Shown here one piece after another: positions 1,337 to 48,190 of a stretch of DNA of 64,000 bases. The position numbers and the translations under genes were made by a program. The first letter of the stretch is position 1; each line of letters begins with the position of its first letter. Under the pieces are notes generated by a model. That model did not search any database. It was not told the origin of the DNA and worked only from the letters and a program-made list of their open reading frames with translations. The DNA is taken from positions 254,374 through 318,373 of the IMG/VR virus record IMGVR_UViG_3300028840_008185, one strand, 5' to 3'.

Positions 1337-1369
1337 GTCTTTCTCCACGGTGCAATTTTTCAAATCTAC

Positions 1370-3342: not shown

Positions 3343-3350
3343 TTTTCATC

Positions 3351-6339: not shown

Positions 6340-6374
6340 GTCTATGCTCCTTTCATTTTTGCATTATTTTTTTC

Positions 6375-7367: not shown

Positions 7368-7385
7368 AAATTTTGGTCCTCTCCC

Positions 7386-8345: not shown

Positions 8346-8366
8346 GATTACTCCCTTATTTGTTTA

Positions 8367-10439: not shown

Positions 10440-10473
10440 ATTTATTTGACCTCTCTAGGTGGTATATTTGCCT

Positions 10474-11037: not shown

Positions 11038-11041
11038 AGAT

Positions 11042-13318
11042 TCACCTCCTAGCCCCTTTAAACATGGCATTATAGATGTGATTTATTGTAAACTCGTTGC
11101 CTTTCTTTTCCATAGCTTTTGCAAAGTTCTTGCTATTGGCAGAGAACTGTTCCCAGAGGCCCTTGTCTTCTTTCATCTTTCTGATTGCTTTGGCAAATAG
11201 AAGATAAGCATTTGGGTTCCAAACTAAAGAGCCATTAACCCCGTCGCTCACTACCTCTGATACAGCCCCAACATCTGAAGCTATTACTGGAGTGCCGCAA
11301 GTCATGGCTTCGAGAATGACGAGGGGCAATCCTTCCATATTTGATGGAAGTATTAGAGCATCAAAAGCCGCATAGAACTTCTCAACATCCTGTCTGTGCC
11401 CAACAAAGTATACATTTTTGAACTGCGCCGCTGCCTGTTTCAACGCGGCACCTTGTGGGCCATCTCCTACAAGCACGAAAGCCGCATCGGTGACTACCTG
11501 GGCGCACTTAAGTATCACTGCCAAATTCTTTTCTGGCGAAAGTCTGCCCACATAACCAACGACAAAATCTTCTTTCACGTCAAGATCTTTTAGTATTTCT
11601 TTTGAACGAGGAATCTTGAAACGATCCCAATCCACTTGTTGCGGGAGAACCGCCACGTTTTTATTTCCGTCTTTCAGGAGCTTTCTACCCATATGTCCGG
11701 AAACAGAGATGAGTGTAGCTACTAGCTTGTCTCTCGCCGCAACCTTGCACATAGAATCTTGCCACATAAGCTCGCTGTGAACAGTCTCGATTACGCGACA
11801 CCTGAAGCCTTGCTGCCATGCCTGCCGCAACACGTTGTATACTCCAAAGCTATTGTAGAAATGGACTATACTGTAATTGTAGGATTCTACGAAGCACTTT
11901 AGGGCGTATCCTTTGCCCTGTCCCGACAGATCTTGATATATAGCTCCAGTATCCTTGAATAGTTTATCTAATTCTTCACTAATGCCGGATATAAAAGCTA
12001 TATGTGGCTCATAAATGCTTTTATCTAATTTGTCAATTGTGTGCTTGATCCAAACTTCTCCTCCGCCGGCCATTTTGTATGGGACAATGTAAAGAACCTT
12101 TCTTTTGTCATTTATTCTACTACTCTTTTTGGGAATAGGTAAATCTAAAATCATCTGGGCAGCATTTTCCCAAGAGAACTCTTCAGTTGTCTTTTTCGCC
12201 GCCTCTTGGATTCTGGCCTTTTCTACGTCCGCGTTTTCATAGACCCGGCGCATCAATTCGGCACAGTGCCTCGTGTCTGGGTCGCCCACCACCGCATCTT
12301 TGTTGTGAACCCAATACTGCATGGAAGCAGGTGCTTGCATTTCACCCGTATTTATTAGTAGAGAGTTGTCATCATTGAGAAATTCAAGCTGGCCACCGTG
12401 ACGTGGCGCAATAACAAGCATCCCGCAGGCCAAAGCCTCTAATCCTGGGAGCCAGAAGCCTTCGCAGGAACTCATGCTCACGACCGCATCACAGGCAGTA
12501 TAAAGCGATCCAATGTCGGGAATATATGTGTTGATAATCTCCACTTCTGGAGGGTTCTTTCTGCCCTTAAATGCCCGTTCTAACACGCTTTCTACGTCTA
12601 CCTCAAACGGTTTGTCTGCATCGGGTTGCTTAAATTTTGTTTTCATCACAAGGCAGACATCATCATCGCCAGAAAAGGCGCTCAGATAAGCTTCTAGGAC
12701 CCTCTCATGCAGCTTTCTGTGGTGAGGTATGGCGTTGTGTAAAAATTTCACTTTCTTTTCTGTTCGCAGCTTGAACGGAGTAATTTCTGGGTTGAACATA
12801 TTGGTGTCTACGCCATGAGGCACTACCAACATCTTGCTCTCGGGTATGCCATTCTTGGCGAAAATATCATAGGAATATTGACTGGATGGAAGCACATAGT
12901 CAATTGCATGATGGTAGAGATGCCAGCCCGGAGGTAGAATAGAACTCTCAAAGTTCCATATTCCTGCGCGAGCTAGGGATTGTGGGAAAAAGCGCCTTGG
13001 AAATTGATAGAAAATTGTGTAAGCGATCTCAAGGTCATACGGAAAGTTCTTGTCCGCCACTTCTGGCAACTTGTTTTGGGGAGTGGCTTTTATCTGCTTG
13101 CCATCTTCCATTAGGTAATCCACTGGACCTTGGCTAAGTGAGCCGTGGTAACCAGGGACCAAGTATGGACGAAGATCGTCAGGAAAGTGTTCAAGATTGT
13201 TGGTGGACCTCATGTGAATTTCATGGCCCCCGATGTTCACCATCGCTCGGGCCAGATATTGCGAGACAAAGCTCCATGAGTGCTGAGTCCCTAGCATTGT
13301 ATGCCATCTAACTTTCAT
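11042..13318 (-). CDS. Tandem double GT4 (GT-B) glycosyltransferase
   Basis: Domain 1: VVPHGVD...YTACDAVVSMSSCEGFWLPGLEALACG. Domain 2: GYVGRLSPEKN...FDALILPSNMEGLPLVILEAMTCGTPVIASDVG. Confidence 0.93.
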   Translation of the reverse strand: MKVRWHTMLGTQHSWSFVSQYLARAMVNIGGHEIHMRSTNNLEHFPDDLRPYLVPGYHGSLSQGPVDYLMEDGKQIKATPQNKLPEVADKNFPYDLEIAYTIFYQFPRRFFPQSLARAGIWNFESSILPPGWHLYHHAIDYVLPSSQYSYDIFAKNGIPESKMLVVPHGVDTNMFNPEITPFKLRTEKKVKFLHNAIPHHRKLHERVLEAYLSAFSGDDDVCLVMKTKFKQPDADKPFEVDVESVLERAFKGRKNPPEVEIINTYIPDIGSLYTACDAVVSMSSCEGFWLPGLEALACGMLVIAPRHGGQLEFLNDDNSLLINTGEMQAPASMQYWVHNKDAVVGDPDTRHCAELMRRVYENADVEKARIQEAAKKTTEEFSWENAAQMILDLPIPKKSSRINDKRKVLYIVPYKMAGGGEVWIKHTIDKLDKSIYEPHIAFISGISEELDKLFKDTGAIYQDLSGQGKGYALKCFVESYNYSIVHFYNSFGVYNVLRQAWQQGFRCRVIETVHSELMWQDSMCKVAARDKLVATLISVSGHMGRKLLKDGNKNVAVLPQQVDWDRFKIPRSKEILKDLDVKEDFVVGYVGRLSPEKNLAVILKCAQVVTDAAFVLVGDGPQGAALKQAAAQFKNVYFVGHRQDVEKFYAAFDALILPSNMEGLPLVILEAMTCGTPVIASDVGAVSEVVSDGVNGSLVWNPNAYLLFAKAIRKMKEDKGLWEQFSANSKNFAKAMEKKGNEFTINHIYNAMFKGARR

Positions 13319-13644: not shown

Positions 13645-15430
13645 TTATGTCCACGTATTGAAATCAAATGGCGCAAATAAAGTGCTTGGAGCCACCGTTC
13701 CATATAGATTGCCAGGAACTCCCGCACCAACATCTCCTATGGGAATGCCACCCAAAGAGTTTAACGTATTGTTAGCAACGACGCATATATTACAGCCTAT
13801 CAGCCCGACAAGTGGGCCAGTACCCCCTCCAGATATTTCATCAACCATATTGCTATTTATTGTGGCATTGGTTGCAATGATCACAAATATTATGCCCACA
13901 GTGGGGGCGATGGGGTTCAAATCATTTACAAGAAAATTATTGCCGTTTATCTGTATGTTATATATTCCAGGACCCAATGATGGAGCCGCTAATATCGCAC
14001 TGCCAATTGCCGCTACACCTTGGAACTTGAAGCTGTTATCTAACACTCGTGTTCTATGTGAATCCGACAGGGCTATTACGGCGTCCCAGTTCCCTCCGGT
14101 AAATGTGCATCCATGGATAAGAGAACCTTCTTGCACGTTACCAACCATGTATTTAGAATCTCCTGAGTTCCAGTTTGTGCTTGAAAAGCCTTGAATAGTA
14201 ACGTTTTCTAATTCCGTAATTCCAAATGGGGTGGCGGGCTCAAGAGCCCCTTGTCCTCTATCACCAACTATAACTATATTCATCGTGCCAGCAGGTGCGT
14301 AGCCGTCCGTGGGAGATGATATCATAGCATTAATCAATTTAACTCTACCCTCACTCACAGTATATGCCGGGTCAGCAGCTGGTCTACCAGAAAGCTGTAT
14401 AACTGGATAGTCTGTGCTCAGGGTAAATCCATCTCTGATAGATGTTGGGATCCAGCCGCCATACATAAAAAGCCCATCGATAACGGCGTCAGCCGAAGAG
14501 ATTAATATTGGACTATTACCATCGCCATAACCAAGAACATTCTCGTTCATATTTATGCGAAGATTTTTAATTCTGAGAATATCCATTTCAGTACGTATAA
14601 AACTAGTATTTATTATCCCAGGTCCATAAGTATACATATACAACCCATTAGCCTCAACCCTATCACCTCCAAAATCAATAACCGGAATGTTCGCTTTATA
14701 TGGCTCACATCTCACAGCGCAGTCGTGTATTTTAAGGCCCGAGCTAGCTCCAGTGCTTCTAATTGCCTGACTGCCGTAGCCATCCAAAAAGAGACAATAG
14801 TTTACTAGACACCCAAAACCACTGTGTTCTAATAAAGTTGTGCCTTCTCCAATAGGCTCAAACTGGCATTGGGAGACTTGGGTCAAAATAGCGCCGGGGC
14901 CAGTAGATAAACAATAATCTTTATTAACCGGAGCAAGTCTTGTTTGCTCCACTCTTGCTTTGATCCCAGCTTGTATGTAAATAGATCCTTCTATATCACA
15001 TTGTTTAATTAGAAGATTGTCTGCATCGCTCACAACAGCCTCATACACGCCAGCGCCAAAATTAATAATCCGTATGTTTTGCATCAAAGACCCAAACGCA
15101 TCTCCCGTAAAAGTAAACATAAAGGAACCTACCTCATTTACTATTACAGGACGCGCTTCAACTCCAATTATCCTGACAGGCTTTGCAAACTCATGGGGAA
15201 CCGTTATATTATATTCACCACCCCTCACCAGAATGGTTCCACCTGACAATGCAACATCTAGGAGGGCCCTTTCCAAAGCATCTTGACCATTATACATTCC
15301 GCCCTCGGTGGCCACACCATCAGTGCATGAAAGCACAGTTCGAGAATGGTGGTCGTTAGCCTCTATGCGTAAATCCAGGCTTGGGAAAGTGCCGCCACCA
15401 ATACCACCTATGGGGCTAAAAACATCGCTT
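13645..15430 (-). repeat. Dispersed paralogous block, copy 1 (partner at ~55369-57142)
   Basis: Long near-identical peptides (e.g. VRCEPYKANxPVIDFGGDR, NLRINMNENVLG). DNA differences are mostly at third codon positions. Confidence 0.92.
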
Positions 15431-15852
15431 GATCTTGCAACTTCAAGTTCACCAACAGCGCTGGTAGCCAAAACACGCAATATGTTAGTGTTTTTTCTTA
15501 TTGCTGCCTGCCAGCCATCAAACTCATCTGCTTCTTCGTCGGCTGGAGGGCGTATGCCCTCATCTGTCTTGACCGCCGCAAGAACCCTACCTTTAATACG
15601 CCCATCTAGAGTCAGCTGTATCAAGTAAGTTCCAGCGACATCGGGCGTAAATGAAGCTGCGTCGGTTGTGGCACCTGCCATTACTGCCGCTGATCCAGAT
15701 GGTATATATATAAACTCCCACTGAAAAGAAGTAACGCCGGTATTATCAAGATTGGTTAAGGCAACAAGAACACCGTCTACAATATCGTCCCTGCTCTCAT
15801 TGGGCCCGCCGCTTACAGCGTTTTGCGTTATAACTATTTGTATACTAGGCAT
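13645..15852 (-). CDS. Virion appendage protein: PKD/Ig-like N-terminus plus right-handed beta-helix
   Basis: N-terminal TSFQWEF...ASFTPDVAGTYLIQLT (PKD-like). ERALLDVA..GGTILVRGGEY and I..N.F repeats are typical of pectate-lyase-like beta-helices. The C-terminal ~590 aa are paralogous to 55369-57708. Confidence 0.7.
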   Translation of the reverse strand: MPSIQIVITQNAVSGGPNESRDDIVDGVLVALTNLDNTGVTSFQWEFIYIPSGSAAVMAGATTDAASFTPDVAGTYLIQLTLDGRIKGRVLAAVKTDEGIRPPADEEADEFDGWQAAIRKNTNILRVLATSAVGELEVARSSDVFSPIGGIGGGTFPSLDLRIEANDHHSRTVLSCTDGVATEGGMYNGQDALERALLDVALSGGTILVRGGEYNITVPHEFAKPVRIIGVEARPVIVNEVGSFMFTFTGDAFGSLMQNIRIINFGAGVYEAVVSDADNLLIKQCDIEGSIYIQAGIKARVEQTRLAPVNKDYCLSTGPGAILTQVSQCQFEPIGEGTTLLEHSGFGCLVNYCLFLDGYGSQAIRSTGASSGLKIHDCAVRCEPYKANIPVIDFGGDRVEANGLYMYTYGPGIINTSFIRTEMDILRIKNLRINMNENVLGYGDGNSPILISSADAVIDGLFMYGGWIPTSIRDGFTLSTDYPVIQLSGRPAADPAYTVSEGRVKLINAMISSPTDGYAPAGTMNIVIVGDRGQGALEPATPFGITELENVTIQGFSSTNWNSGDSKYMVGNVQEGSLIHGCTFTGGNWDAVIALSDSHRTRVLDNSFKFQGVAAIGSAILAAPSLGPGIYNIQINGNNFLVNDLNPIAPTVGIIFVIIATNATINSNMVDEISGGGTGPLVGLIGCNICVVANNTLNSLGGIPIGDVGAGVPGNLYGTVAPSTLFAPFDFNTWT

Positions 15853-15867
15853 TTTTCAAATCTCCTA

Positions 15868-18726
15868 TTATATTCCCAGTAAAGCTCTCATCTGGGATCT
15901 GCTTATTTCTCTGGTTGCGTTGGCGAAGCCCGCCCTCTTAAGATAAACAACAACCAATATCTTCATGCTTAGGGCTGGAAGTAAATTACCATAGCCATCG
16001 TTGTATAGATCATCAACATATATGTTGAGCAATGATGTGAGAGGATCGTAATACAACCCAACCAAATCTCTGATGGTGCTTCCAAACGTTACATTATACT
16101 CATTAGCTATTGATTGCAGCGCCGCAGAGATTTTAACCTTCCCCGAAGTGAAGTCTGAAATCTGCACGAAACTTCCATCAGCATATCTCATAGCATCTTG
16201 ACCACTAGCAGTTAAACCACTGGAAGATTCAGCCACAAAATTATCGAATAGTAGCACTCCAGAATATCCATCTAGAAACGTTGGATTTCCATATGAGTCT
16301 GTTATGGGAATGTCCAATGCTAGGTGGTTTATTTCAAGATCAACGGAGTAAAACGTTCCATCCGGATTCAAGATATTACCCGCATCAATGATCAGATTTC
16401 CCGGCACAAACCAATCATTTTGGCCAGACGGCAAATCATCTGTAATATTTTCTGTGAAGGTTGTTGGCAAAAGCCTTCTCAAATCGAACACAATTAGATT
16501 GTCTGGAATCCAGGTTGCATAATATTCGATTTCCCAAGTTATACTTGGAAATGGCGTCGTGGTAAATCTTGAGCACGTTCCCGGAATATCGACGGTGGTA
16601 GTGAGTGGATCTAACAAACTTTCCACTTGAAGTTCCATTCTTGTGAAAGTAGAACCTGCTGGGAAAGTGCTTATAACGCCATTCACAAAATCCAATATCA
16701 GGGCCGAATCAGTAGCGTTCACTATGCCGTCCGCATTAACATCTGCCCTAAAGAATTCCGCAGCCGACATATATCCATCTATAATAAACTGCTGGCCATT
16801 GACGGTTGAAATATCGATGTTAGAGGAGCCGTATAAGGTGTTAAATGCAACGATAAGATCATTAACCGTGCTAACATCTGTCAAATTTACATCTCCATCC
16901 CCATTAACGTCTCCATAGGCATCAATGACCTCCGTCTGACCAATTATCCTATACCTTTCCGAACAAGACGGTTCATCGGGGCTTAAAATAGAACCAACCC
17001 AATTATTTTGGGTCAGATCTGCATCAGGCACTAGCACATTGAATACATCTCCAACGGCCAACCCTGGATAAACGGTTGATCCCGTAATGCTACTAGCATT
17101 TCCTCTTGGATTCTGATCTCTTGCTCTGCCGAGAAGAACTGGGTCCGGATCGGAAGTCAACAAGGTGGTAAGAGAAGATTGATTGATTAAAGAAATCGCA
17201 GGAACGGTCGTCACTCTTGAGTATACCTGGTTTCCTGTTCTCTGATCCTGTTCTGGATCGGAAAACTCATTTGTGGCCTCTAGCAACACAAAATTATAGG
17301 TATCGCGAGTAACTGTGTAGTATGAAAGTGGCCCCTCTACATATGGAACCTCTGTGTTGGTCGCATCTGGAGCGATACGGGGCACCTCTAGGCCAAGGCC
17401 ATCGTCATAACCTATTCCGTCGGAAACCTTAACATAGCTGCCCTCGACACTGAACCACATATCGCTCGTGGTTACATTAATCCACTGCGAGCCGTCAAAC
17501 ACAGTCATATAGCTATTATCAGTTCTATCGCTTGCCTCTTCTAGGAGTATATCACCTATGCTGGTGTCTCCAGATCGACCAACGGTGAACACATAATAAT
17601 TTCCTGAAATTATTGGCGACCTAACCGGATCAGAGATTTCAGAACCAGTAAACACAAAATCCACTATCTGTGGAGTTCCATCTAAATGAATGCCTTGATT
17701 TATTAGATCAGCCTCATCTAATACAAGCTGAGCAATAATAGAAGGATCTGGATCAAAATCTATGGCGTCATCGGGCGTAGGAGAAACTGGGCAACTTACT
17801 TCAGTCTGGAGCGCATGCAGGGTCATAACAATTGAACCAGACCACTCGTAGCCATCGTTCCCTGGAACTGCAGCCGAAAGTGGATCATATTCGACAGAAA
17901 GCAGAACAGAAATCTTTTGGATATTGACGCCGCTGGCTTCAAACTTCTGGCCAATTCTGGTGGTTACGTCATCTTTAGGTATTTCCCGCTGTGTCACTGA
18001 AGCCAAACCAATGTTCAGATCAGAAACTGATTTGTCGGGTCCAACAGCGTCTATAAGCATTTGAGAAATGCTCAGAGCCGCAGCAGGAATAAACGATCCA
18101 AAAAACTTGCTGGGTTGCCCAACTTGAGATACGACAACAGGATCCGGCGACACTTCCATAGACATAGCCTCACTAATGACACAGCGCCCGACCAAATTGT
18201 ATCCATCCGCCGGGGAAGCAAGCTTCTCACTTCCATTAAGGTTTCCAGCAAAATTGTTGAAAAGAATACCCCTTATGCTTTTGTATCTGCCCCTGGTAAC
18301 TTGAGTTCCGTTCTCGTTGAAGGTCAGCTCATCATGAACCAAATCACCACCAAAAGTATCTCCAATGATGGCGACTCGCGTCTGAGCCGCGCCGGCTAAT
18401 CGCAAACCTGTTAGAGTGACTGCAAGCTGAACTCCCTGAACCTCATCAGAAACAGAGGTAAGGGGTGTGCCCACATATATGTTTTGACCATCAAACTGGT
18501 AACCGTCCAACAAGGTTTGCTGGGACGAGTTCAAGTCGCTACTATCAAAGATTTCTTGTCCCGTTTTAAACTCAGGAAGCACACCGCTCCCAAAGAAGTT
18601 GTTTTCGAGGGCAGCATCAATGCCTATATTTCTAGCCTGCTCGTCATCGAAGTCTTCCTTATCAACTTGTTGCCCGTCGTACCAATTGACCCTTTTAACA
18701 TCAACGGATAATAGTTTCCTAACCAT
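15868..18726 (-). CDS. Baseplate/fibre-attachment protein with dockerin-like EF-hand pair
   Basis: N-terminal RVNWYDGQQVDKEDFDDEQ resembles contractile-system baseplate/fibre N-termini. Contains GDVNGDGDVNLTD and ADVNADGIVNATD. Located directly after the wedge gene. Confidence 0.6.
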   Translation of the reverse strand: MVRKLLSVDVKRVNWYDGQQVDKEDFDDEQARNIGIDAALENNFFGSGVLPEFKTGQEIFDSSDLNSSQQTLLDGYQFDGQNIYVGTPLTSVSDEVQGVQLAVTLTGLRLAGAAQTRVAIIGDTFGGDLVHDELTFNENGTQVTRGRYKSIRGILFNNFAGNLNGSEKLASPADGYNLVGRCVISEAMSMEVSPDPVVVSQVGQPSKFFGSFIPAAALSISQMLIDAVGPDKSVSDLNIGLASVTQREIPKDDVTTRIGQKFEASGVNIQKISVLLSVEYDPLSAAVPGNDGYEWSGSIVMTLHALQTEVSCPVSPTPDDAIDFDPDPSIIAQLVLDEADLINQGIHLDGTPQIVDFVFTGSEISDPVRSPIISGNYYVFTVGRSGDTSIGDILLEEASDRTDNSYMTVFDGSQWINVTTSDMWFSVEGSYVKVSDGIGYDDGLGLEVPRIAPDATNTEVPYVEGPLSYYTVTRDTYNFVLLEATNEFSDPEQDQRTGNQVYSRVTTVPAISLINQSSLTTLLTSDPDPVLLGRARDQNPRGNASSITGSTVYPGLAVGDVFNVLVPDADLTQNNWVGSILSPDEPSCSERYRIIGQTEVIDAYGDVNGDGDVNLTDVSTVNDLIVAFNTLYGSSNIDISTVNGQQFIIDGYMSAAEFFRADVNADGIVNATDSALILDFVNGVISTFPAGSTFTRMELQVESLLDPLTTTVDIPGTCSRFTTTPFPSITWEIEYYATWIPDNLIVFDLRRLLPTTFTENITDDLPSGQNDWFVPGNLIIDAGNILNPDGTFYSVDLEINHLALDIPITDSYGNPTFLDGYSGVLLFDNFVAESSSGLTASGQDAMRYADGSFVQISDFTSGKVKISAALQSIANEYNVTFGSTIRDLVGLYYDPLTSLLNIYVDDLYNDGYGNLLPALSMKILVVVYLKRAGFANATREISRSQMRALLGI

Positions 18727-18741
18727 AGGAATATCCTCCTA

Positions 18742-21700
18742 TTATTTTATATAGCTCACAAAGGCTCTGGTGTGTCCAGGCCTCAGTCTGTTTATCAAAT
18801 CTGTCAGTAATCCTTGAGCCAATGATGTGTCTATTAGCTCAAAAGTATCAATAACTTCTACCCAGAAGTCAAATATTCCTCTTGCAAGATCTCTCACAGT
18901 GGCCAGGTGCTCAACCTCAGTTGGGGTTGTGTCAAAATCTAGCAGAAGTCTCGTAAGCGCATCGCTGATAACTGGTTGTGCCGTGTTCACATTTCCAGTG
19001 TAGAGCAAATCCTTACCAATAAGCTGTCCTGGGCCACTTCCGCCCAAATAGGTAATTGTTCTCATTTCGCTTGAGAATCTCATATTGTCGAACCTAGCCA
19101 TCGCCGTAAATTGGCCCGTGAAATCTGCGCCAATATGAACCGTATTGAATAGATCCTCTAGATTAATATCAGCGAGTATATTCCTAGCAGAGATAGTTCC
19201 AGCGGTCGCAGAACCCCATACTGTTGGTGAGCCATACAGATGGCCCTGGCCATAGAGCAAGCCTGTTCCGTAGCGAATAACGCCAGCCTCAGTTCCATCT
19301 ACCATTAGAACCAGCCTATCTTGGTTGTCTATGTTGTTCAAATCCCAACCCACCCAGACTCGATGCCACGTATTCTTTTTCCAATAAACGGGCGCTCTTA
19401 TCTGGAAGTCAGTTCCTGAAGCACTAACCGACAACGTTAGGAAGCCAGTTTCACTCTTGTAGATGCTGAATCTATCCCCTTGGGCTGTAAGCGGCACATA
19501 AATCACATTAACGACACGAGAGTTTCCAGGCAGAGCCTGCCCAAGAGTAATGGTTATGCCGTCGCTAGCCAAACTACCTCCAGTGAAGTAGTTTGTATCA
19601 CCACTGCCACCCGATATGGTCACCGATCTCACAGTTCGAGCCCGAACTGGAAGAATTACACTAACGGCAGAGACCGCTATGGTTTCCAACTGTTGTTCAG
19701 GAGCTAAATCCACATAGAACCTTCTTGTCGGATCGTTATATGTATCCAGTATTGGGCTCACCCAAAACTCAATTGTGCCCTGATCGTTGCTGAATATGGA
19801 TGCATTATCATATTGCAACGATTTTTGCTGGTTGAAGACTCCAGACTGGCCAAAACTCGAATTAACACTATTCTCACTCTGCCTAAAGGAATCGGAGAAG
19901 CTTGCGTAAAACGATGCGCTATTGGTCACAGCGTCATTGAAATGGAATAGGCCAAGCGTTTGTATGCTGTCTTCGTATTCCTGAACAACGAGGGCGTCTG
20001 TTGTAATGGATCTTCCAGAGCTGGGAGTAAGTTCTCCACGGCCAGTATCATCTGAAACTTCGTCCAAAATACGCATCTCGTCTATTACCGCATTCGCCTG
20101 ATTAGCTGAATTTAGATCAGAGCCGGTGTATAAATTATCTGGCATTTGTTCCCAAGGAACAGTCAAAAATGTTGGGAAGTCAACTTCATACCAACAGCTA
20201 TGAAGCAGGAATGGCTGCCCACCACTTCGGGCAATTTCCAAAGTAATCAAACCGTTTGCGAAACCACTGTCGCCGTGCGAGGTGGTAAGTTGTCTCCAAG
20301 CCACATTTGAATAGGAATCGGCCCAAGTTGTGTTGAGAAAAATTGTGTCAGAGTCTTTAACGGTGCCCGACGGATCTAAATCAACATTGGTAATTGTATA
20401 ACTGCTGGCTATGGAAGCCGGCGATGTAATATTGATAATCTTACCTATATCTTCGGCATCCCATCTGGAATAGGCATCTGAGAACTGGGCGGTTCCAACA
20501 AGCGTCTGGCCGTTTGCTCCAGCCTGCTCCTGAACTGACAAATGAACTTCCGCATATTCCCCATTATTCTCCTGCCAGTTTAAAGGATTGGCCTCTCTAA
20601 CTTCCAATGTCCCAGCGGACAGCGTTGTATCAACTGGAGTGAACGACGCCAGAATATCCGTTATAGAAGTAAAAAAGCGAGTTGTAGTTTGACTACCAAC
20701 AGAGGTGAAGGTCAAAGTTTCCATGCCGTAACCGTCAGTGGTATTTCCAGTTATTATAACTCTATTAAGCCCTGTGAAATCAAAATTGTCTCCGGATATA
20801 GTAGCTTTAAGCTTTCTGCCCGTTACATTATTAGATGGTTGACAGAAATCAAATGCCCCAGCGACAAGCACTGGGATTATATGGCCACCAACGACTGTAG
20901 CCACCAGAGCGAAAACTCCCGGATCCATTTCTACCTTTTCCACTATAATGCTTGTGATATTAATCTTGGAAATGTCCGTAGGCTGCGGCATTATTGTGTT
21001 TAGAATGTTGGTTTGCAGGTCTGGCCAAATATATACAAGCTGCCTACACCTAGCTGTAGTTAATCCATAAGAACGTAGAATAACACTATCACCGATACTT
21101 ACACCATTATATATGTCAACGATTTCTTGGTAGCCATCCTCACTAAAGCCATAATCAGGAGTTAAAGTGTCTGGTGAATACAGCTCAGTCTCGGTGCCGA
21201 GAGCATCTATGGAGAATACACGAACTTTTTCGAAGCTTGGGTCACTTACCGTATCAGCCTCCATGGGATTTACAGAGAATCTTATGCCGGTCAAACTAGA
21301 CACTGCTGTATAGGGAACGCCCGAGCCCGCTGGCCCAACTTCCATCCGCAGTTGATTTTCGCCAACAACAGCTCTCACAAATACGAAAGGAGATGTTTGA
21401 GTGTTGGTTCCGTCAGTCGTATCATCCAATATCATAAATTTACTTCCTACAACAACGCCCTCGGTCACAAACTGAGATCCGCCAGAGGTAAATAGATCTG
21501 AGCCAGCGACAGTTCTTCCGTCAAAGCCGCCGATGATTGGAGCGGTAGCCGAAGGTATTAGAATCTCACTAGCCTCGTCCATATATAGTGCCCCACTTGG
21601 CGGCTCCAAATATCCTCTAAATCTATATGTATTGGGAACCTCTACGCCATCCACAAACAAGTGGAGTTCGTCGCGCATCTCTATTGTGCTAATTTTCCAA

Positions 21701-24700
21701 GATACTGCAATGTGATGAGTTTCCGATCTTTCCCAATCCTGTATGTTTGTGCTCAACATTTTAAGGCGAGTGTTATCGTCATAGACCTTAAAGCGCAAAA
21801 ATCCTTTGCCATCTTTGAATAAAGACATGCGGCAACGATTTTCTGTGAAGCCAGTATCAAAGAAGTAATGTAGATTGTCAGATGTGAAATCTATCCCATC
21901 AAAACCAGCCAGGGCTCCGTTATAAGCGTCGTAGGCGTCGAAAGCCATATTCATGGAGTCATAAGCATCGACTATGAAGGCAAAGTTCACGGATTCATCA
22001 GTGGATCTCAGGGAGTCGTTTACTTCGTCAATACTATAGCCATCGTAGCCATCATAACCATCTGCGGTCGAGGCTTCAATTACATCGTAAAACTCGCCAG
22101 TCGTAGCCAAAGTTCCAGTGAATTCTCTGCTTTCGGCAATAGGTGCTCTAACACGCAATCTCCACTTATTAGAAGTGGAATCAAACCAAATGAAGTATCC
22201 AACCGCACTGTGCAGGTTGCTGGGTCTTCCCAACACGGAAGTATCAGTGCGCTCTAGCGTAAAAGGTATTTCAATTGGGTTCGCATTGTTCGAGCCGATA
22301 TACACCTTGTCCGGTTGATATGTGCCCTCAAACTTTATGTCGAAAGTTATTGCAGCATCATTGTCTATACCGTCCCACTCAGGAATTACGAAAGCTTCCC
22401 AAGTTCCCTCACTGAACCTAAGATTGGAGTTTGCTGGAAGGCTTGCACTTTGTCCGTCAGTGTCGAGCAGCAAACCATCTCCAAACTTTCCAGGAACAAA
22501 AGTGGGCAATTCAGAATCAGTATTAGCGGCCAGTTCCATTTCCATCAGGTGGAAGAAATCTCTACCCAAAATCCACTCTAAGAACACAGACTCGATTATG
22601 TTCGGATCTATTTGAGTCAAGCTGCTTACAAGCTGTTTAATAGATGGAATAGTTGGGCCCTTTGGAAACGTTTGCAGGGAGCCCTTCACCGCATTACGGT
22701 AGGTTTCTCTATCCAACAGCTCCGGAATTGTGGAAAGCTCTTCTATGCCCGTGAGCACACCAAAGTTGTCCCTAAGGCTATTTCTCAATGCGCCATAGCG
22801 ATATGTTACAAAATATGTTTCGTCTTCATCTAGCGTGCTGGAAATGCTCCAGTCAAGAACGTTGTCACCATACTCATAGTCGATCAGTATCTCGTCGGAG
22901 GTATATGTGTAATCCAAATACATACGGCCAGAAATGTAGTCAACCAATACAGCCGCTCCAGCTCTAAGCTTCGCTTTGTATACAGCCTTAGCTAAAGAGC
23001 CTGCCGTGGCGGTTGTGGTCGAGGGCAGGTAAATCCTGTTATTGACGGCATCAATATATCCGTTGGTGCCCTGCGAAAAGTAATTTATAGAGTTGTTCAA
23101 GCCGCTTACATTGCTTGCCGAAACCAAGGCAACTAGGCTGCTTGCAAACATAGAGGCTATTCTCGCAGCGTTTACATATAGGCGAGAGCCATCAGTTTGA
23201 ATGGTGAGACCCGCGCCGTCGTTGTCATCGTCTATGGAAACGCCATCGGCACTCATTACGATTGTATTGCCTGAAGTTGAAGATACAACTGCACCCTCAG
23301 AAAAATCTATTGGATCTGGTCTAACCTGCAAATCGGTCACTTGGAAGATGTGATCTACGCGAGATATATTGTCTCTCACTGTGACCGTGTTTCCATTAGT
23401 TCCTGCTACAACCACAATAACAGTGCCATCTGTCAACGTTCGCTCTCCAGCTGCTTCTAGATCTGGAGTTTCAACAGTGGTGTCAGTAACAGTTCCGACT
23501 CTAAATACTTCAGTATTGGAAACGCTAACCGACGGGCTCCTGTAAATATCATCAACTCTTATGATATGGTCGTTACGAGTTTTAATCAAACCCCTTCTAT
23601 ACGAGGCATCTCCAATGTCGGAGCTTGATCCAGAATTTCTAGCCAAATAGGCAACCCCGGATTCATAATCTACCATATAATCACCAAGCTGTTGCAACCT
23701 CTGAAGGTTGTCCGCTATGGAATCATCTGGGTCATAAAAGAACTCTCGCAGAAAAATATCAACATCAGAAAAGGTTAGGGTGGTGTTGAAACTCGAACCT
23801 ATGAAGCTTCCTATGGCCGAGCCAATGTCTGTATCTGGAAGCTCTATTCTGAATGCCACAAATGTTTTACCAGTGATCGTAATCTCTTCGGTCACGACTA
23901 TCTGCGCCTGAATTACTTGGTCGAATTCCGCAGCCTCTCGCACCACATCCACTATGTTTGGAGGAGTCACTGAAGAGAAGTATACTTGGTTCCCCGTGAT
24001 TCTGGTTGGGGTATATATCTCTCCGGTTGTTTCATTAAATATTCTGAATACTTCTTCTACCTGGTTATTCTCGGTGACCAGACCAATGGTGTCAATTAAT
24101 CTGTTCTCTACGCGCTCACCTATGACCTCAATGTGAGTTAGTAGCTCGTAATCAGTGCCTTCTGCATAGGTGTCCTCATAGTCGAACGTAACGGTTGCCG
24201 CATTGCCCCTTAAATCTCTGCCCGGCAGAGAAGCTATTTCGTTAAGATCAGAGAAGAACACATAATCTAGCCCTTCCTGGAATGTCTGTTTGAACTTATA
24301 TGTGGCCACTGGAGGAACTGTGGTTGTTCCATCAGTCCCCGAGCCATCTACACCATACACAAACGCTTTGCCAGTAGTATAGTCGATTGAATATTGACCT
24401 GGCGAACTGGGCAAGCTGGCCTGATTGTATACAATCTCAGTCACAAACGCCGGGTGTTTTTGTGTTGGGTCAAAGTTTTTAGCAGGATCCAAGAAGGTGA
24501 CTCCATTCAACCTGGGCACAGCACCAGTGGAATCAACTATGGGTGCATGGTCAAAGAAGAAAACTGTAGCAACCGCTTCTACGCTTTCTCTAACTATATC
24601 GACGGTTGTGGCCACCTCAACAGTGTCTGGGTCTATAATACGCCCAAGACGCTTATATTGATAAGAGATTACGAACTTATCATTTCCACTTGGAAATGGA

Positions 24701-25610: not shown

Positions 25611-28600
25611 TTATCGATCCTCAACCTCGACGGTTACGGTTCCTGGAGCGAGGAACTCGCTCTTCTGCGCTGAAATGCTCAGCTTGGTCCCGCTTACGTT
25701 TGCTTTGTTGAATCTTGAAATTGTAATTCTATCGAGACCTTCTACGTTATACGCATTGTTAATTATGTCTGAAGAATCTAGCGTTGTTCCCAAAGCACTT
25801 GCGCTCAGGGTGGCCGTAATGTTGTCTGCTACGTCTTGTCGCACCGTTGTCTCTCTATCTCTATAAGCAGTCGCTACAACAATTTTAGCATCTACATCAA
25901 GCTCAACCTTTGTAGCGCCCTTCACCAACACATCAGCGGTAATTGGCCTATTATCTTCTACGACATCTGTGGCATCCACAATTAGCTTGTTGTATTCAAA
26001 ATTTACTGTAATCCTTTCGTTTTCCTTAGGTGCAGTATAATCATAATCTGCGAAGTATGCAGCGTTTGCCTCTGGCTGATTGAAAGTATCAATCTGCATG
26101 GACCCCGAAATTGTAGCTCCAGAGTCCTGGAATCCAGATTGGCGGTTTATGGAAGATATATAGCCAAACACCTTATTGGTATAAGCGGCCCCATCTCTGG
26201 AATAAAACATATCTTCGTAGTCGTTCTCCTTGGCGTAGTAGAACGTAACTCTGAGATCAGTTCCAGTGACTATAGCATTGGTGCCGGTATTAGCAGCGGT
26301 AGCGGCCAATTGCACTTCGGTGCTAGTTAGAGTGGAAATCTCTATTGCGTCTGCACGATCCCAGCTCGAATCCTTGAGGCCATAGTTGGTCAAATCATAT
26401 GTGGTGTCCACACTTTCAACCAGACCTGCAACCGTTAACGATACTTCTTCAACCGACTCCACTCTAACTACCGAAATGGTGCTTGGAATGACCGCCGTGT
26501 TGGCGAGCCCCTCCGCTACCCTTATTGGTATAGAAAGATCTAGGCCAGCAGAAGTAGCAGTATATATAGCGGTGACCTTATTAATGGTTGTGCCGACTAT
26601 CCGTAAGGTTCCGTTTGACGGCAAGTTAGATGTAGTTAGCTTCAATATCGTAGGAGATCTGCGCTGGTTCGAAACGACAGTTGTTCCAGAGAACAGGTTT
26701 TGAACCGGCTGGTAACCATCAACTCCAACAAAAGAATTGAACCCATCTCCAGAGATGGGCAGTGATGAAATATCAGAATCAGGAACCAGATTAAAGAAGT
26801 CTGCCACATAGTTTGCTCTTACCGTTGTTCCAGAAGTAACTGCGGTAGAGGGAAGAATTGTAATAATGTTATTTATCACTCCAGCACTGCCGTATTCATC
26901 GCTGGTCGAAATGTCAACTAGATTGTATACAACCGTCACATTGTCACCAACTTGCGCCAAAGTATCCGATGGTAGGGTAATAAGCTTATTAGCGAATGTG
27001 CCGTCGGAAAGCGCAGTGTTGAATACTTCTGGGTCTCCAGTCAAAGTTGTGTCCGTGATGCTGTGGATGTTGCTTACGGCCCTAGTAACTTGAACGGTAG
27101 ATTGAGCCCCCACTACGGCGGATTCTGAAACGAAAGTATTTACCGCAAGCACACGGGTAATTGGGTATTCTGTCGTCACAAGCAAGTTGTTGTAGGCGTC
27201 CAGGTTGGCAGTGGTAATCTCATCTCTTATGTAATTTGGAAAGCCCCATTCCACTGAATCCTGAGCCGTGTTTAAAACGTCCGCAGGGTCGAAATTATCA
27301 AAATCTGTATACTGATCATACTCGCGAACCCAAATGTAATCAACCTGTAGAACGTCACTTGAAGTAGGCAAAGTTCTACCAGTTATGGTGATGCGGCCAG
27401 TTGGATTCAAATCTGCGGTGCTGTCTGGGTTCTGATCTGAAATCGTATATCTTTCGCCCGTAGTTAAGTTGAAAACACGACTCACGGTTTTTATTGGAGT
27501 GTGGTTCACAGTAACAGAACTTCTAGTGCTCCCGACTGTAGAGTTCTCATTCGTCACTTGAACATCCTGCCTAACTGCCGGAATATCAATCACATCGGTA
27601 AATGATAGGGCGTCAATTCCGTTGAAAGGCCCTTTAACAAGAGACTCATCAGTGAGTTCAATTTGAGTAGATGTCCACCTAAGCTTATCCAACCCAAACG
27701 CACTTCCACCAGCAGATCCTGTATCCTTGACCAACACATAGTTTCCCTGTAAGTTTCCAGTCTCGTCTAGGTATTGCTCAACGAAATTAGGGCCAGAAGA
27801 ACTGCCGCTTACGGAAGTAATTTCATTTACGGGCTGCGTAGGTATTTCTTCTCCATCCACAAATACACCAAGTCTGCGCGAGTTGAGCGTCAGATTTGTG
27901 TCGGGAGTTAAGCTGCTCTGACCCAAAATGAAATCATTGTCCGTATCGGTGGCCAGTTGCGTTCCGCTCTGATCGTAGTATATAAAGCTGTCTGAATCGC
28001 TTTGTAGGTTCTCACCCATCACATAGATGTCCACCCTGCCACCAGTTCCTGGTTCCGATACTATTAGGTTTCCATCACTATCAGTGGTGGTGATAGTTCC
28101 ATCTCTGATCATAAGGGGATCGCCCGGTTCAACCACCAAGGCGTCAATGGCATCAGCCAAACCTAAAACAAGGCTTCTGTAAGCCAATGAAGTTCCAACA
28201 TTGGCCCCAGCAAAAGTGGCCAAAACCCTGGTTCTGTAGGAAGGATCGTCTTCCAAATCTGTGCCGCCTGTGAAAGGAGCGACATTGGTCACAGAATTCA
28301 CACCAGAAACATTATGGTTAATCACGGAATAAGTTGAAATGTTGGCAGCAGAACCAATACTCTGCGCTTGGACCGACGCCTCAATGGCGAACTCATCGGT
28401 AATTCCAGCGGTGTCCAGCTCGTTACGCAGACGAGTTGCAGTAGCTCTCAGCGAGTTTGATTGAGTTTGTTGCACTACGATAGAAGAGACCGTAAGAAAA
28501 GGAATGCCATTTCTTGTGCGAACTACCGAGTCCTGAGGAATGGTAATGTCCGTATCTATTGACCTAAACGTAAACACCACTGTCCCGATTGCCCTGGTCC

Positions 28601-28847
28601 CAGTCCTTCTTGTGACGCCAAAGTTAGAGCCATAGTTGGTTAAATCCTGTCCAGATAGGTTCGAAACAGATTGAAGGGCAGAAATCTCCCTTAAAGCATC
28701 ATAGATGTTGGACATCTGGAATGCCTGAGCATCGACAAACAAATCCCTGGCCACAGAATTGGGTTTGGTGTCCAAACTTGGTTGGGTCAACCTTAGTCGG
28801 TCTAGTATGTCTAATACTATATCATTAAAGCTTTTAAATGTAACCAT
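25611..28847 (-). CDS. Baseplate J-like (gp6) protein with large insertions
   Basis: DLTNYGSNFGVTRRTGTRAIGTVVF, FTGGTDLEDDPSYRTRV, GRVDIYV; C-terminal LGTTLDSSDII...VEGLDRITI. Confidence 0.9.
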   Translation of the reverse strand: MVTFKSFNDIVLDILDRLRLTQPSLDTKPNSVARDLFVDAQAFQMSNIYDALREISALQSVSNLSGQDLTNYGSNFGVTRRTGTRAIGTVVFTFRSIDTDITIPQDSVVRTRNGIPFLTVSSIVVQQTQSNSLRATATRLRNELDTAGITDEFAIEASVQAQSIGSAANISTYSVINHNVSGVNSVTNVAPFTGGTDLEDDPSYRTRVLATFAGANVGTSLAYRSLVLGLADAIDALVVEPGDPLMIRDGTITTTDSDGNLIVSEPGTGGRVDIYVMGENLQSDSDSFIYYDQSGTQLATDTDNDFILGQSSLTPDTNLTLNSRRLGVFVDGEEIPTQPVNEITSVSGSSSGPNFVEQYLDETGNLQGNYVLVKDTGSAGGSAFGLDKLRWTSTQIELTDESLVKGPFNGIDALSFTDVIDIPAVRQDVQVTNENSTVGSTRSSVTVNHTPIKTVSRVFNLTTGERYTISDQNPDSTADLNPTGRITITGRTLPTSSDVLQVDYIWVREYDQYTDFDNFDPADVLNTAQDSVEWGFPNYIRDEITTANLDAYNNLLVTTEYPITRVLAVNTFVSESAVVGAQSTVQVTRAVSNIHSITDTTLTGDPEVFNTALSDGTFANKLITLPSDTLAQVGDNVTVVYNLVDISTSDEYGSAGVINNIITILPSTAVTSGTTVRANYVADFFNLVPDSDISSLPISGDGFNSFVGVDGYQPVQNLFSGTTVVSNQRRSPTILKLTTSNLPSNGTLRIVGTTINKVTAIYTATSAGLDLSIPIRVAEGLANTAVIPSTISVVRVESVEEVSLTVAGLVESVDTTYDLTNYGLKDSSWDRADAIEISTLTSTEVQLAATAANTGTNAIVTGTDLRVTFYYAKENDYEDMFYSRDGAAYTNKVFGYISSINRQSGFQDSGATISGSMQIDTFNQPEANAAYFADYDYTAPKENERITVNFEYNKLIVDATDVVEDNRPITADVLVKGATKVELDVDAKIVVATAYRDRETTVRQDVADNITATLSASALGTTLDSSDIINNAYNVEGLDRITISRFNKANVSGTKLSISAQKSEFLAPGTVTVEVEDR

Positions 28848-28856
28848 TTATCAACC

Positions 28857-29288
28857 TCATCCTACAGTGAGAGAAAACGTCTCTTCCACTATAGTTAATT
28901 TTTTCGTTAATACCGAAACAGTAATTTGGTATTGTCGCGGATCTGTCTCGTCTCTGGTAACTGAAATGTCCCTAACAGCCGCTATGGTCTCGCCAGCAGA
29001 AACATATTGAAACTGAGCTTGTGATTTCTGCAAAGCAATCAAGTTGCTAAGTGTGTTGGAGATGGCGCTTTCCGCCTCTATCTCTGCCATACTGGCGTCT
29101 AAGACCTGGCCAATCATAGCTGAAGACAGCAAGCTGCCATACCAGTTATGGAACCTATTGGAACCCAATGTTGTCAAGATTGCCTTAACAATATCTTGGA
29201 CCAATTTCTCATTGTCCCTGACCGTCTGTATGGTCCCATCGGGATTGATTTTCAAATCATTGGCTTCAATTCTCAGATCAAAAGACAT
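28857..29288 (-). CDS. gp25-like baseplate wedge/sheath initiator
   Basis: DIVKAILTTLGSNRFHNWYGS..L...DPRQYQITVSV; size and position upstream of the J-like gene. Confidence 0.88.
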   Translation of the reverse strand: MSFDLRIEANDLKINPDGTIQTVRDNEKLVQDIVKAILTTLGSNRFHNWYGSLLSSAMIGQVLDASMAEIEAESAISNTLSNLIALQKSQAQFQYVSAGETIAAVRDISVTRDETDPRQYQITVSVLTKKLTIVEETFSLTVG

Positions 29289-48162: not shown

Positions 48163-48190
48163 TATACAATCCTCCAAAGATATTATATAT

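What the first reader, a model, noticed from the sequence alone, without database searches (positions are those of the whole stretch)
16680..16925. Dockerin-like Ca2+-binding pair in a baseplate protein
GDVNGDGDVNLTDVSTV and ADVNADGIVNATDSALI match the two F-hand repeats of type I dockerins, with a longer than usual spacer. Dockerins bind cohesins on cellulosome scaffoldins and on some archaeal and anaerobe surface proteins (established). Inference: the virus could dock onto host cohesins or recruit cohesin-bearing partners as an adsorption mechanism.
Basis: partly seen in the sequence, partly recalled or inferred. Interest (0 to 1): 0.6.

Follow-up and report, generated by a model that had tools for sequence, protein, structure and literature searches.

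The report
Dockerin module in huge-phage baseplate protein
A conserved outer baseplate protein of a group of very large (about 400-460 kb) environmental phages carries a genuine two-calcium "dockerin" module in its middle; no cohesin partner was found, so whether it docks onto anything is still open.

Summary
Both 12-residue Ca2+-loop motifs lie in one 952-aa ORF (window 15868-18726, minus strand; aa 606-617 and 662-673). Pfam Dockerin_1 scores 30.2 bits against a cut-off of 22.9. The motif occurs only twice in all six frames of the 318-kb record, where 0.05 is expected by chance. An AlphaFold2 model superposes on solved dockerins (Z 9-11, rmsd about 2 A, 62-73 residues).

The protein follows the gp25-like and Baseplate_J genes and a 2288-aa protein. 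It has a lectin-like domain resembling the phage 812 tripod leg domain. About 100 protein clusters and 154 IMG/VR loci carry homologues, on contigs up to 491 kb. The Ca2+ ligand positions are kept in nearly all of the 99 aligned.

The module is atypical. It is internal, and its inter-repeat linker is 34-52 aa. In a distant subgroup the linker is 127-150 aa and holds a nested beta domain, around which the dockerin fold is still predicted.

No Pfam cohesin was found in this record or in nine relatives. The host is bacterial but unidentified. The variable gene is the downstream, tailspike-like one. I read the module as a Ca2+-dependent structural hub of the baseplate periphery. Host-cohesin docking is possible but unsupported (about 0.15).

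The parts
15868..18726 (-). P0001, a 952-aa conserved peripheral baseplate protein (tripod/gp10-like) that carries the dockerin module
   Evidence: ORF and translation. 106 homologous protein clusters and 154 IMG/VR relatives. AF2 model with pLDDT 88.3 and pTM 0.78.
16651..16926 (-). Dockerin-fold module, aa 601-692: loop 1, helix 615-632, extra helix 642-649, helix 655-661, loop 2, helix 671-681
   Evidence: Pfam PF00404 at 30.2 bits against a cut-off of 22.9. pLDDT 94-97. Superposes on solved dockerins at Z 9-11, rmsd 1.7-2.3 A, 62-73 residues, 24-35% identity.
16876..16911 (-). Ca2+-binding loop 1 (F-hand 1), aa 606-617, DVNGDGDVNLTD
   Evidence: Asp at loop positions 1 and 12 is invariant in 99/99 homologues. 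Position 3 is N/D in 93/99 and position 5 is D/N in 97/99.
16744..16875 (-). Extended inter-repeat segment (aa 618-661, 44 residues), about 19-22 residues longer than canonical. It holds an extra helix and a conserved QQxIxDGY stretch.
   Evidence: Pfam alignment places 74 residues on 52 profile positions. Loop offset is 56 against 37 in 4uyp_B. The family range is 34-52 aa, or 127-150 aa in the distant subgroup.
16708..16743 (-). Ca2+-binding loop 2 (F-hand 2), aa 662-673, DVNADGIVNATD
   Evidence: Asp at positions 1 and 12 in 98/99 homologues. Position 3 is N/D in 95/99 and position 5 is D/N in 98/99.
17437..18141 (-). Lectin/CBM-like beta-sandwich domain of P0001 (aa 196-430)
   Evidence: VIA-align: phage 812 baseplate chains (tripod protein region 569-941) at Z 14-15.6, Cwp84 lectin-like domain at Z 12, CBM15 at Z 9.1. 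The tripod leg domain is described as Cwp84-like in PMC13433997.
18742..25608 (-). 2288-aa protein, always directly upstream of P0001 homologues. Presumed baseplate arm/scaffold protein (inferred).
   Evidence: Synteny in the great majority of about 70 related loci, where the upstream ORF is 2160-2383 aa. No Pfam or PHROG match.
25611..28847 (-). Baseplate wedge protein (Baseplate_J / gp6-like), 1078 aa
   Evidence: PF04865 at E 1.3e-25. phrog_6 baseplate wedge subunit at E 2.7e-37. Best GenBank phage match is Bacillus phage G gp188.
28857..29288 (-). gp25-like sheath initiator / baseplate wedge protein, 143 aa
   Evidence: phrog_2669 baseplate protein at E 2.6e-13. PF10934 at 29.5 bits, below its cut-off of 32.9.
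13645..15852 (-). 735-aa downstream protein, a probable modular receptor-binding or tailspike-like protein. Only the N-terminal anchor of about 120 aa (window about 15493-15852) is conserved.
   Evidence: Only aa 1-120/160 are shared (35-47% identity) with the downstream genes of 10 close loci, and the rest is unrelated. The downstream gene length varies from 154 to 1202 aa. Weak PKD-like hit at aa 36-82. Beta-helix look-alikes in the ESM Atlas are a lead only.

Best explanation
P0001 is a conserved peripheral baseplate protein of a clade of very large (about 390-460 kb) contractile-tailed phages of bacteria, found in sediment and aquatic metagenomes. It resembles a tripod or gp10-type protein. 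A genuine dockerin-fold module is nested in its C-terminal half, between two long beta strands. The module consists of two F-hand loop-helix motifs, each expected to hold one Ca2+. I propose that it works mainly as a Ca2+-dependent structural hub. Calcium would lock the two helices together and so fix the geometry of this part of the baseplate periphery. The long inter-repeat linker is displayed from this rigid platform, and in one subgroup it has grown into a whole nested domain. Any binding partner is more likely another virion component than a host cohesin. Host specificity is carried mainly by the variable protein encoded immediately downstream. What is shown: the motifs, the HMM match, the family-wide conservation of ligand positions, the predicted fold, the synteny, and the lack of Pfam cohesins in the phage records. 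What is inferred: Ca2+ binding, the structural-hub role, the tripod-like position in the virion, and the receptor-binding role of the downstream protein.
For: Dockerin identity rests on PF00404 above its cut-off, phmmer hits to solved dockerins at E 1e-5, and a predicted fold matching dockerins at Z 9-11 and rmsd about 2 A over nearly the whole dockerin chains. Chance is excluded. Conservation: the Ca2+ ligand positions 1, 3, 5 and 12 of both loops are kept in 93-99 of 99 homologues, down to 31% overall identity. Embedded rather than tethered: the module is internal (aa 601-692 of 952) and flanked directly by strands 592-603 and 693-703. It has pLDDT 94-97 in a model with pTM 0.78. Hub role: the linker length varies from 34-52 aa up to 127-150 aa. 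In the long-linker subgroup the model still brings the two halves together. An unbiased search of 48,161 PDB chains returns dockerins as top hits across the roughly 130-aa insert (2ccl_B: Z 8.6, rmsd 1.8 A, 59 of 62 residues). Not the specificity element: P0001 has uniform conservation (entropy 1.46-1.92 across regions, 1.68 for the dockerin). The downstream gene keeps only a roughly 120-aa N-terminal anchor and varies otherwise. Baseplate context: the gp25-like gene, Baseplate_J, the 2288-aa protein and the sheath lie in one block. The lectin-like domain resembles the phage 812 tripod leg. No Pfam cohesin in 10 phage records.
Against: The only experimentally established function of dockerins is cohesin binding (established knowledge), and nothing here shows the module has lost it. 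The residues at the classical cohesin-contact positions (10, 11, 17, 18, 22) are small or polar and moderately variable, as in working dockerins, so the face may be exposed and functional. I could not inspect model coordinates, so I do not know whether that face is buried. A cohesin-like beta-sandwich too divergent for Pfam could be hidden in the unannotated 2288-aa protein or in other virion proteins. Ca2+ binding itself is untested. A 'structural hub' is hard to distinguish from a 'docking site for an unknown partner' by sequence alone.
Confidence: 0.45

Rival explanations
1. Host docking. The baseplate dockerin binds a cohesin domain displayed on the host cell surface and serves as a primary or secondary adsorption contact.
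For: The fold and sequence are those of cohesin-binding type I dockerins. The module sits on a peripheral baseplate protein that also has a lectin-like domain. Cohesin/dockerin proteins occur on cell surfaces of non-cellulolytic microbes, including sediment organisms (PMC9012536, listed). Adhesion roles have been proposed for a dockerin on another sediment viral contig (PMC13452462).
Against: The host is unknown, so no cohesin target could be named. P0001 shows no hypervariable region, and the dockerin evolves like the rest of the protein. The typical receptor-binding signature lies in the downstream gene. The module is internal and rigidly embedded rather than on a flexible linker. The family spans many habitats and 31-83% identity while keeping the module, which would need a similarly conserved host cohesin.
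Confidence: 0.15
2. Intra-virion docking. The dockerin is the socket by which another virion protein, carrying a cohesin-like beta-sandwich not recognisable by Pfam, is attached to the baseplate. Candidates are the downstream tailspike-like protein through its conserved N-terminal anchor, or the 2288-aa scaffold.
For: The downstream protein has a conserved roughly 120-aa beta-rich N-terminal anchor that must bind some conserved baseplate component. The anchor family changes between P0001 subgroups. Tripod/gp10-type proteins are attachment platforms for fibres in T4 and phage 812 (established knowledge; PMC13433997).
Against: No Pfam cohesin in 10 phage records, and none at E up to 10 in six tail-module proteins. 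The anchor looks PKD/Ig-like rather than cohesin-like. The co-fold of anchor plus dockerin gave no answer, which is not evidence either way. The change of anchor family with subgroup may simply reflect shared descent.
Confidence: 0.2
3. Non-cohesin ligand. The module, or the domain nested in its linker, binds a host envelope component such as a polysaccharide. Ca2+ acts as a cofactor or conformational switch during adsorption, as in Ca2+-activated lactococcal phage baseplates.
For: Ca2+-dependent adsorption and baseplate activation are well known in phages (established knowledge). The linker is the most plastic part and acquires a whole domain in one subgroup. It is also the most variable stretch of the module (entropy 2.01 for aa 631-660).
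Against: No known carbohydrate-binding fold was recognised in the nested domain, only weak matches to tail-tube or neck-protein barrels at Z 5-6.3. No dockerin is known to bind glycans directly (my knowledge).
Confidence: 0.15
4. Chance resemblance or a functionless relic of a captured bacterial gene fragment.
For: Asp/Asn/Gly-rich Ca2+ loops occur in many unrelated repeats. A few family members have degenerate loops (P0070 loop 1, P0084 loop 2).
Against: Two hits against 0.05 expected. Score above the Pfam cut-off. The full fold is recovered. The ligand positions are conserved in about 95-100% of 99 homologues across deep divergence.
Confidence: 0.03

Closest known systems
Type I dockerins of cellulosomal enzymes and scaffoldins (Pfam PF00404), e.g. 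Clostridium thermocellum Xyn10B/Cel48S and Acetivibrio cellulolyticus ScaB dockerins (PDB 2ccl, 4fl4, 4uyp)
   Same: Two tandem 12-residue Ca2+ loops, DxNxDGxIxxxD, each followed by a helix. The aromatic/Pro motif after helix 3 (FP) is also present. 24-35% identity and rmsd about 2 A over 62-73 residues.
   Different: The module is internal in a 952-aa phage virion protein instead of C-terminal on a secreted enzyme. It has no Pro/Thr linker. Its inter-repeat linker is 19-22 residues longer, with an extra helix, and reaches 127-150 aa with a nested domain in relatives. No cohesin is found in the same genome.
Non-cellulosomal dockerin-like modules of bacteria and archaea (survey by Peer et al. 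2009, recalled from memory; ANME archaeal dockerin/cohesin proteins, PMC9012536)
   Same: A single dockerin in a non-cellulolytic context, often with no cohesin in the same genome, and of unknown function, with adhesion proposed.
   Different: Those are cellular, mostly secreted or surface proteins. This one is part of a phage baseplate gene block and is conserved as a core gene of a huge-phage clade.
Tripod protein (gp119) of Staphylococcus phage 812 / Listeria phage A511 gp106-type and T4 gp10-type peripheral baseplate proteins
   Same: Gene position after the wedge and arm-scaffold genes. The lectin-like beta-sandwich matches the tripod leg domain at Z 14-15.6. Similar size, about 950-1150 aa.
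   Different: Only one domain matches. Global TM is 0.13 and there is no sequence similarity. The tripod protein has no dockerin. A trimeric state was not tested.
UniProt A0A6J5RS54, 'Dockerin domain-containing protein' from an uncultured Caudovirales phage (BFVD)
   Same: A member of the same family (Foldseek E 7.5e-83, TM 0.70 by query, 26% identity). It already carries an automatic dockerin label.
   Different: 1332 aa, which fits the long-linker subgroup. It has only an automatic name, and I found no study of it.

Membership tests
Dockerin type I (Pfam PF00404) | HMM score above the curated gathering threshold | tested here: met
   30.2 bits against 22.9 on the protein and 31.9 bits in the six-frame search. 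Homologues in five relatives score 34.5-43.1 bits.
Dockerin type I (Pfam PF00404) | Two tandem F-hand segments: a 12-residue Ca2+ loop with Asp/Asn at positions 1, 3, 5, 9 and 12, followed by a helix | tested here: met
   Loops at aa 606-617 and 662-673. Helices at 615-632 and 671-681. Ligand positions conserved in 93-99 of 99 homologues.
Dockerin type I (Pfam PF00404) | Three-dimensional dockerin fold, with antiparallel helices 1 and 3 held by two Ca2+ loops | tested here: met
   Prediction only. Z 9-11 and rmsd 1.7-2.3 A over 62-73 residues against many solved dockerins. The long-linker relative gives Z 8.6.
Dockerin type I (Pfam PF00404) | Compact module of about 60-70 residues with a short inter-repeat linker | tested here: not met
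   The module spans about 90 residues. The loop offset is 56 against 37 in 4uyp_B. The linker is 34-52 aa across the family and 127-150 aa in one subgroup.
Dockerin type I (Pfam PF00404) | Ca2+-dependent folding and Ca2+ binding | not testable with these tools
   Needs ITC, DSF or crystallography with and without Ca2+ or EDTA.
Cohesin-dockerin system | A cognate cohesin (PF00963) in the same genome or in the partner organism | tested here: not met
   No hit at E <= 0.001 in the phage's own record and none at E <= 0.01 in nine related records of 321-459 kb. The host genome is unknown, so a host cohesin could not be tested.
Cohesin-dockerin system | Demonstrated binding of the dockerin to a cohesin | not testable with these tools
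   No candidate cohesin was available. The one co-fold tried, with the downstream protein's anchor, gave no answer.
Myophage peripheral baseplate protein (tripod / gp10-like) | Gene lies in the baseplate block, downstream of the gp25-like, gp6/J-like and large scaffold genes | tested here: met
   for this window. The order 2200-2380-aa protein, then P0001 homologue, then a variable gene is conserved across most of about 70 loci.
Myophage peripheral baseplate protein (tripod / gp10-like) | Overall structural similarity to a solved tripod or gp10 protein | tested here: inconclusive
   Only the lectin-like domain (aa 196-430) matches the phage 812 tripod (Z 14-15.6 over about 150 residues). Global TM is 0.13.
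Myophage peripheral baseplate protein (tripod / gp10-like) | Presence in virions, and trimeric assembly on the baseplate | not testable with these tools
   Needs virion proteomics or cryo-EM. The phage is uncultured.

The most novel reading that the evidence does not exclude
A whole clade of huge phages uses a cohesin-dockerin-type, Ca2+-dependent protein lock as part of its adsorption apparatus. It would either clip the virion onto a cohesin-bearing host surface protein or clip exchangeable receptor-binding proteins onto the baseplate. The dockerin would also have evolved into a split platform that can carry a nested domain in its linker.
Probability: 0.3. Interest if true: 0.8.

Novelty: new variant of a known kind. 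Interest (0 to 1): 0.5.

Why it matters
Dockerins are the standard example of a high-affinity, Ca2+-dependent protein plug, studied almost only in cellulosomes. Here a dockerin is a conserved core feature of the baseplate of a widespread clade of 400-460 kb phages. It has an expanded linker that can host a whole nested domain. If it binds a partner, that would be a new way for phages to attach to cells or to assemble exchangeable receptor-binding proteins. It would also be a natural example of a split dockerin scaffold, of interest for protein engineering. If it is only a Ca2+ clamp, it would show that the dockerin fold has been reused as a structural element outside any cohesin system. That bears on the many orphan dockerins in non-cellulolytic genomes. 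Either answer can be tested with a roughly 120-residue recombinant fragment.

Tried and rejected
1. A co-fold of the dockerin segment (alignment A4) with the conserved N-terminal anchor of the downstream 735-aa protein (alignment A3) and two Ca2+ scored 0.00. The verdict was 'no answer', so it counts neither for nor against binding.

2. Host identification failed.
- tblastn of P0001 against 50,697 GenBank phages found nothing.
- The scan of 185,579 species genomes found only an unrelated Lachnospiraceae dockerin.
- The NCBI names of family members gave only one, probably mis-binned, Patescibacteria MAG label.
- 'Relatives' are not defined for virus records.
- Sequencing runs say only sediment or seawater.
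- A Sigma70_r2 gene shows only that the host is bacterial.

3. Searching the original 452-kb ENA contig for cohesin was not possible because the record is not held.

4. Foldseek did not recognise the split dockerin in the long-linker model. The alignment-independent VIA search did.

5. The nested domain gave only weak matches to tail-tube or neck-protein barrels (Z 5-6.3). I do not name a fold for it.

6. Four literature searches found no study of a dockerin in a phage tail or baseplate protein. They turned up only incidental mentions and one sediment viral contig with a dockerin beside a NosD-like protein.

7. I considered the 'moraphage/ERM' lineage (PMC12619734) as the clade's identity and could not link it.

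8. I did not use the large representative-protein search, because no claim here rests on the absence of relatives.

9. I could not inspect model coordinates, so whether the cohesin-binding face is exposed remains unknown.
Full report
**1. The observation**

The finding lies inside a single 952-aa ORF on the minus strand, window 15868-18726, called P0001 here. Both quoted peptides are present.
- Loop 1 is aa 606-617 (window 16876-16911).
- Loop 2 is aa 662-673 (window 16708-16743).

Pfam Dockerin_1 (PF00404) matches aa 604-677 at 30.2 bits, above the curated cut-off of 22.9 (E 5e-7). It covers profile positions 1-52 of 57. That puts 74 residues on 52 profile positions, so about 22 residues are extra. 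A six-frame scan of the whole 318-kb record finds this one place only, at 31.9 bits.

The motif D.[ND].[DN]G.[IVL]...D occurs exactly twice in all six frames of the record. Both hits are in this ORF, 56 residues apart. Shuffled residues give 0.05. phmmer against PDB sequences returns 18 dockerin chains, the best at E 1e-5 (4uyq_B, with 4uyp_B next). In that dockerin the two repeats are offset by 37 residues. The observation, including the 'longer than usual spacer', is confirmed.

**2. The fold**

I ran AlphaFold2 on the whole protein with an alignment of 99 homologues. The model has mean pLDDT 88.3 and pTM 0.78, with pLDDT 94-97 over aa 600-700.
- Helices lie at 615-632, 642-649, 655-661 and 671-681.
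- Strands at 592-603 and 693-703 flank the module directly.

Foldseek and VIA-align both place aa 601-692 on many solved dockerins. The scores are Z 9-11, rmsd 1.7-2.3 A, 62-73 aligned residues and 24-35% identity, covering almost the entire target chains. An unbiased scan of 48,161 PDB representatives gives the same result. In silico, then, the two repeats do fold together as a dockerin, with one extra helix in the linker. Ca2+ binding itself is inferred from conserved ligand positions, not shown.

**3. The protein and the genome**

The window is the last 64 kb of a 318,373-bp IMG/VR virus record. The same gene lies on a 452,619-bp ENA contig. The record has 45.8% GC, 40 tRNA genes and a sigma-70-family gene. 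It is therefore a huge phage of a bacterium.

On the minus strand the gene order is:
- tail sheath (45616-48177);
- a weak tape-measure match (41187-43289, PF20155 below its cut-off) and several large ORFs without any family match;
- gp25-like sheath initiator (28857-29288);
- Baseplate_J wedge protein (25611-28847);
- a 2288-aa protein (18742-25608);
- P0001;
- a 735-aa protein (13645-15852);
- glycosyltransferases.

The tail genes resemble those of Bacillus phage G, SPO1-like phages and cluster C mycobacteriophages only remotely.

P0001 aa 196-430 is a lectin/CBM-like beta-sandwich. Its best structural match is the phage 812 baseplate chain, residues 569-941 (Z 14-15.6). The Cwp84 lectin-like domain follows at Z 12. 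The phage 812 paper describes the 'leg' domain of its tripod protein as Cwp84-like and possibly receptor-binding (PMC13433997). By position and this partial fold match, P0001 is best described as a tripod/gp10-like peripheral baseplate protein. This is an inference.

**4. The family**

The word-indexed protein search found 106 homologous clusters, most about 940 aa, on contigs up to 491 kb. Most carry a precomputed Dockerin_1 hit, even at 32% identity. IMG/VR holds 154 relatives on records up to 459 kb. Five relatives that are 91-100% complete (392-459 kb) each contain exactly one Dockerin_1, in the P0001 homologue. No full-length homologue exists in 50,697 GenBank phage records or in 185,579 species genomes.

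Across 99 aligned homologues the Ca2+ ligand positions are nearly invariant.
- Loop 1: Asp1 and Asp12 in 99/99, N/D3 in 93/99, D/N5 in 97/99.
- Loop 2: Asp1 and Asp12 in 98/99, N/D3 in 95/99, D/N5 in 98/99.

The positions that contact cohesin in type I dockerins (10, 11, 17, 18, 22) are small or polar and variable. A few members have a degenerate loop, such as P0070 and P0084.

One family member is already in UniProt/BFVD with the automatic name 'Dockerin domain-containing protein' (A0A6J5RS54; Foldseek E 7.5e-83). Four literature searches found no study of it.

**5. An unusual dockerin architecture**

No family member has a canonical linker. The segment between the two loops is 34-52 aa in the roughly 940-aa group. 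It is 127-150 aa in a distant group of 1060-1340-aa proteins.

I modelled that segment from P0087 (aa 560-830, 21-sequence alignment; pLDDT 83.5). The order is helix 1, then a beta-rich domain of about 110 residues at pLDDT 90-96, then a helix, loop 2 and helix 3.
- Foldseek missed the relationship.
- The alignment-independent scan of 48,161 PDB chains put dockerins at the top, spanning model residues 32-215. The best was 2ccl_B at Z 8.6, rmsd 1.8 A, 59 of 62 residues and 37% identity.

So the two halves are predicted to re-form a dockerin around a nested domain. The nested domain has only weak resemblance to tail-tube or neck-protein barrels (Z 5-6.3), and I do not name it. A shape search of the ESM Atlas found only ordinary dockerins, none with this nested layout.

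**6. Partner and host**

Pfam Cohesin (PF00963) has no hit at E <= 0.001 in the phage's own record and none at E <= 0.01 in nine related records. The control genomes do respond. Six tail-module proteins show no cohesin even at E up to 10. The 452-kb contig itself could not be searched. The habitat is sediment and seawater or marine-sediment metagenomes.

**7. Where the variability lies**

In most of about 70 related loci the upstream protein (2160-2383 aa) is conserved, while the downstream gene ranges from 154 to 1202 aa. The 735-aa downstream protein shares only its first 120-160 residues (35-47% identity) with the downstream genes of ten close relatives, and the remainder is unrelated. That shared region is a PKD-like sandwich plus a conserved R[LI]PA..E..EF.GGW stretch. 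This pattern is the usual signature of a modular receptor-binding protein or tailspike with a conserved baseplate anchor. Beta-helix look-alikes in the ESM Atlas are a lead only.

P0001 itself is evenly conserved. Mean column entropy is 1.46-1.92 in all regions and 1.68 in the dockerin. The linker (aa 631-660, entropy 2.01) is the most variable piece of the module.

I tested one specific idea, that the anchor plugs into the dockerin, by co-folding. The job returned 'no answer' (score 0.00), which is not evidence either way.

**8. Interpretation**

- *Shown:* a bona fide dockerin-type sequence and predicted fold, conserved as a core feature of a peripheral baseplate protein in a widespread clade of huge phages. 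It is internal, rigidly embedded, and has an expandable linker.
- *Not shown:* Ca2+ binding, any partner, or the host.

I commit, at 0.45, to a Ca2+-dependent structural hub that fixes the local baseplate geometry and displays the linker or insert. The rivals are:
- intra-virion docking of a cohesin-like domain not recognisable by Pfam (0.20);
- a non-cohesin host ligand or Ca2+ switch (0.15);
- chance or relic (0.03).

**9. Novelty and score**

The dockerin fold is well known. Orphan non-cellulosomal dockerins are known too (my knowledge; PMC9012536). One family member already bears an automatic dockerin label. What appears new:
- the context, a conserved baseplate protein of a huge-phage clade;
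- the architecture, an internal module with a long linker and a nested domain;
- the question it opens about phage adsorption or assembly.

I rate it a new variant of a known kind, with interest 0.5. 

Noticed in passing
Relatives P0086-P0106 (e.g. P0087 aa 581-808); loci L064-L079: In a distant subgroup (1060-1340 aa) the two dockerin repeats are separated by 127-150 residues that form a nested beta-rich domain. The dockerin fold is still predicted to close around it. No similar nested dockerin was found among ESM Atlas clusters.
   Followed up: yes
window 13645-15852 (-): The 735-aa gene after P0001 keeps only a roughly 120-aa N-terminal anchor (PKD-like sandwich plus an R[LI]PA..E..EF.GGW stretch) in common with the downstream genes of ten related phages. 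The rest differs completely. This is a modular receptor-binding or tailspike-like cassette.
   Followed up: partly
window 1-13318 (-): Directly after the tail block lies a run of glycosyltransferases (GT4, GT2, Glyco_trans_1_2), SAM methyltransferases and a radical SAM/SPASM enzyme. This could be a glycan or peptide modification cluster acting on the virion or the host surface.
   Followed up: no
window 50111-54733 (-): A 1540-aa protein with a right-handed beta-helix region (PF13229, aa 969-1107) lies in the block upstream of the sheath gene. It may be a second giant tailspike or depolymerase-like virion protein.
   Followed up: no
whole record G000 (318,373 bp) versus ENA contig k141_1691178 (452,619 bp): IMG/VR labels the record a 'provirus', 79% complete. 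The same gene sits on a 452.6-kb contig, and complete relatives are 392-459 kb. The provirus call is therefore probably an over-trimming of a free huge-phage genome.
   Followed up: partly
G000:C1:471-49481 (outside the window): 35 of the record's 40 tRNA genes are packed, all on one strand, into the first 50 kb.
   Followed up: no
G000:C1:241161-241346 (-), locus L086 (outside the window): The phage encodes a sigma-70-family factor (Sigma70_r2, 37.9 bits) in a 233-aa ORF, which is consistent with a bacterial host.
   Followed up: no
window 18742-25608 (-): The 2288-aa protein is always found just upstream of P0001 homologues (2160-2383 aa in relatives). It has no Pfam or PHROG match at all. 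It is presumably the baseplate arm or scaffold, but is entirely uncharacterised.
   Followed up: partly
P0070 and P0084 (family members): A few homologues have one degenerate Ca2+ loop (P0070 loop 1 reads DVVTSNKIDISD; P0084 loop 2 carries an insertion). Full two-site Ca2+ binding may therefore not be indispensable in every lineage.
   Followed up: no
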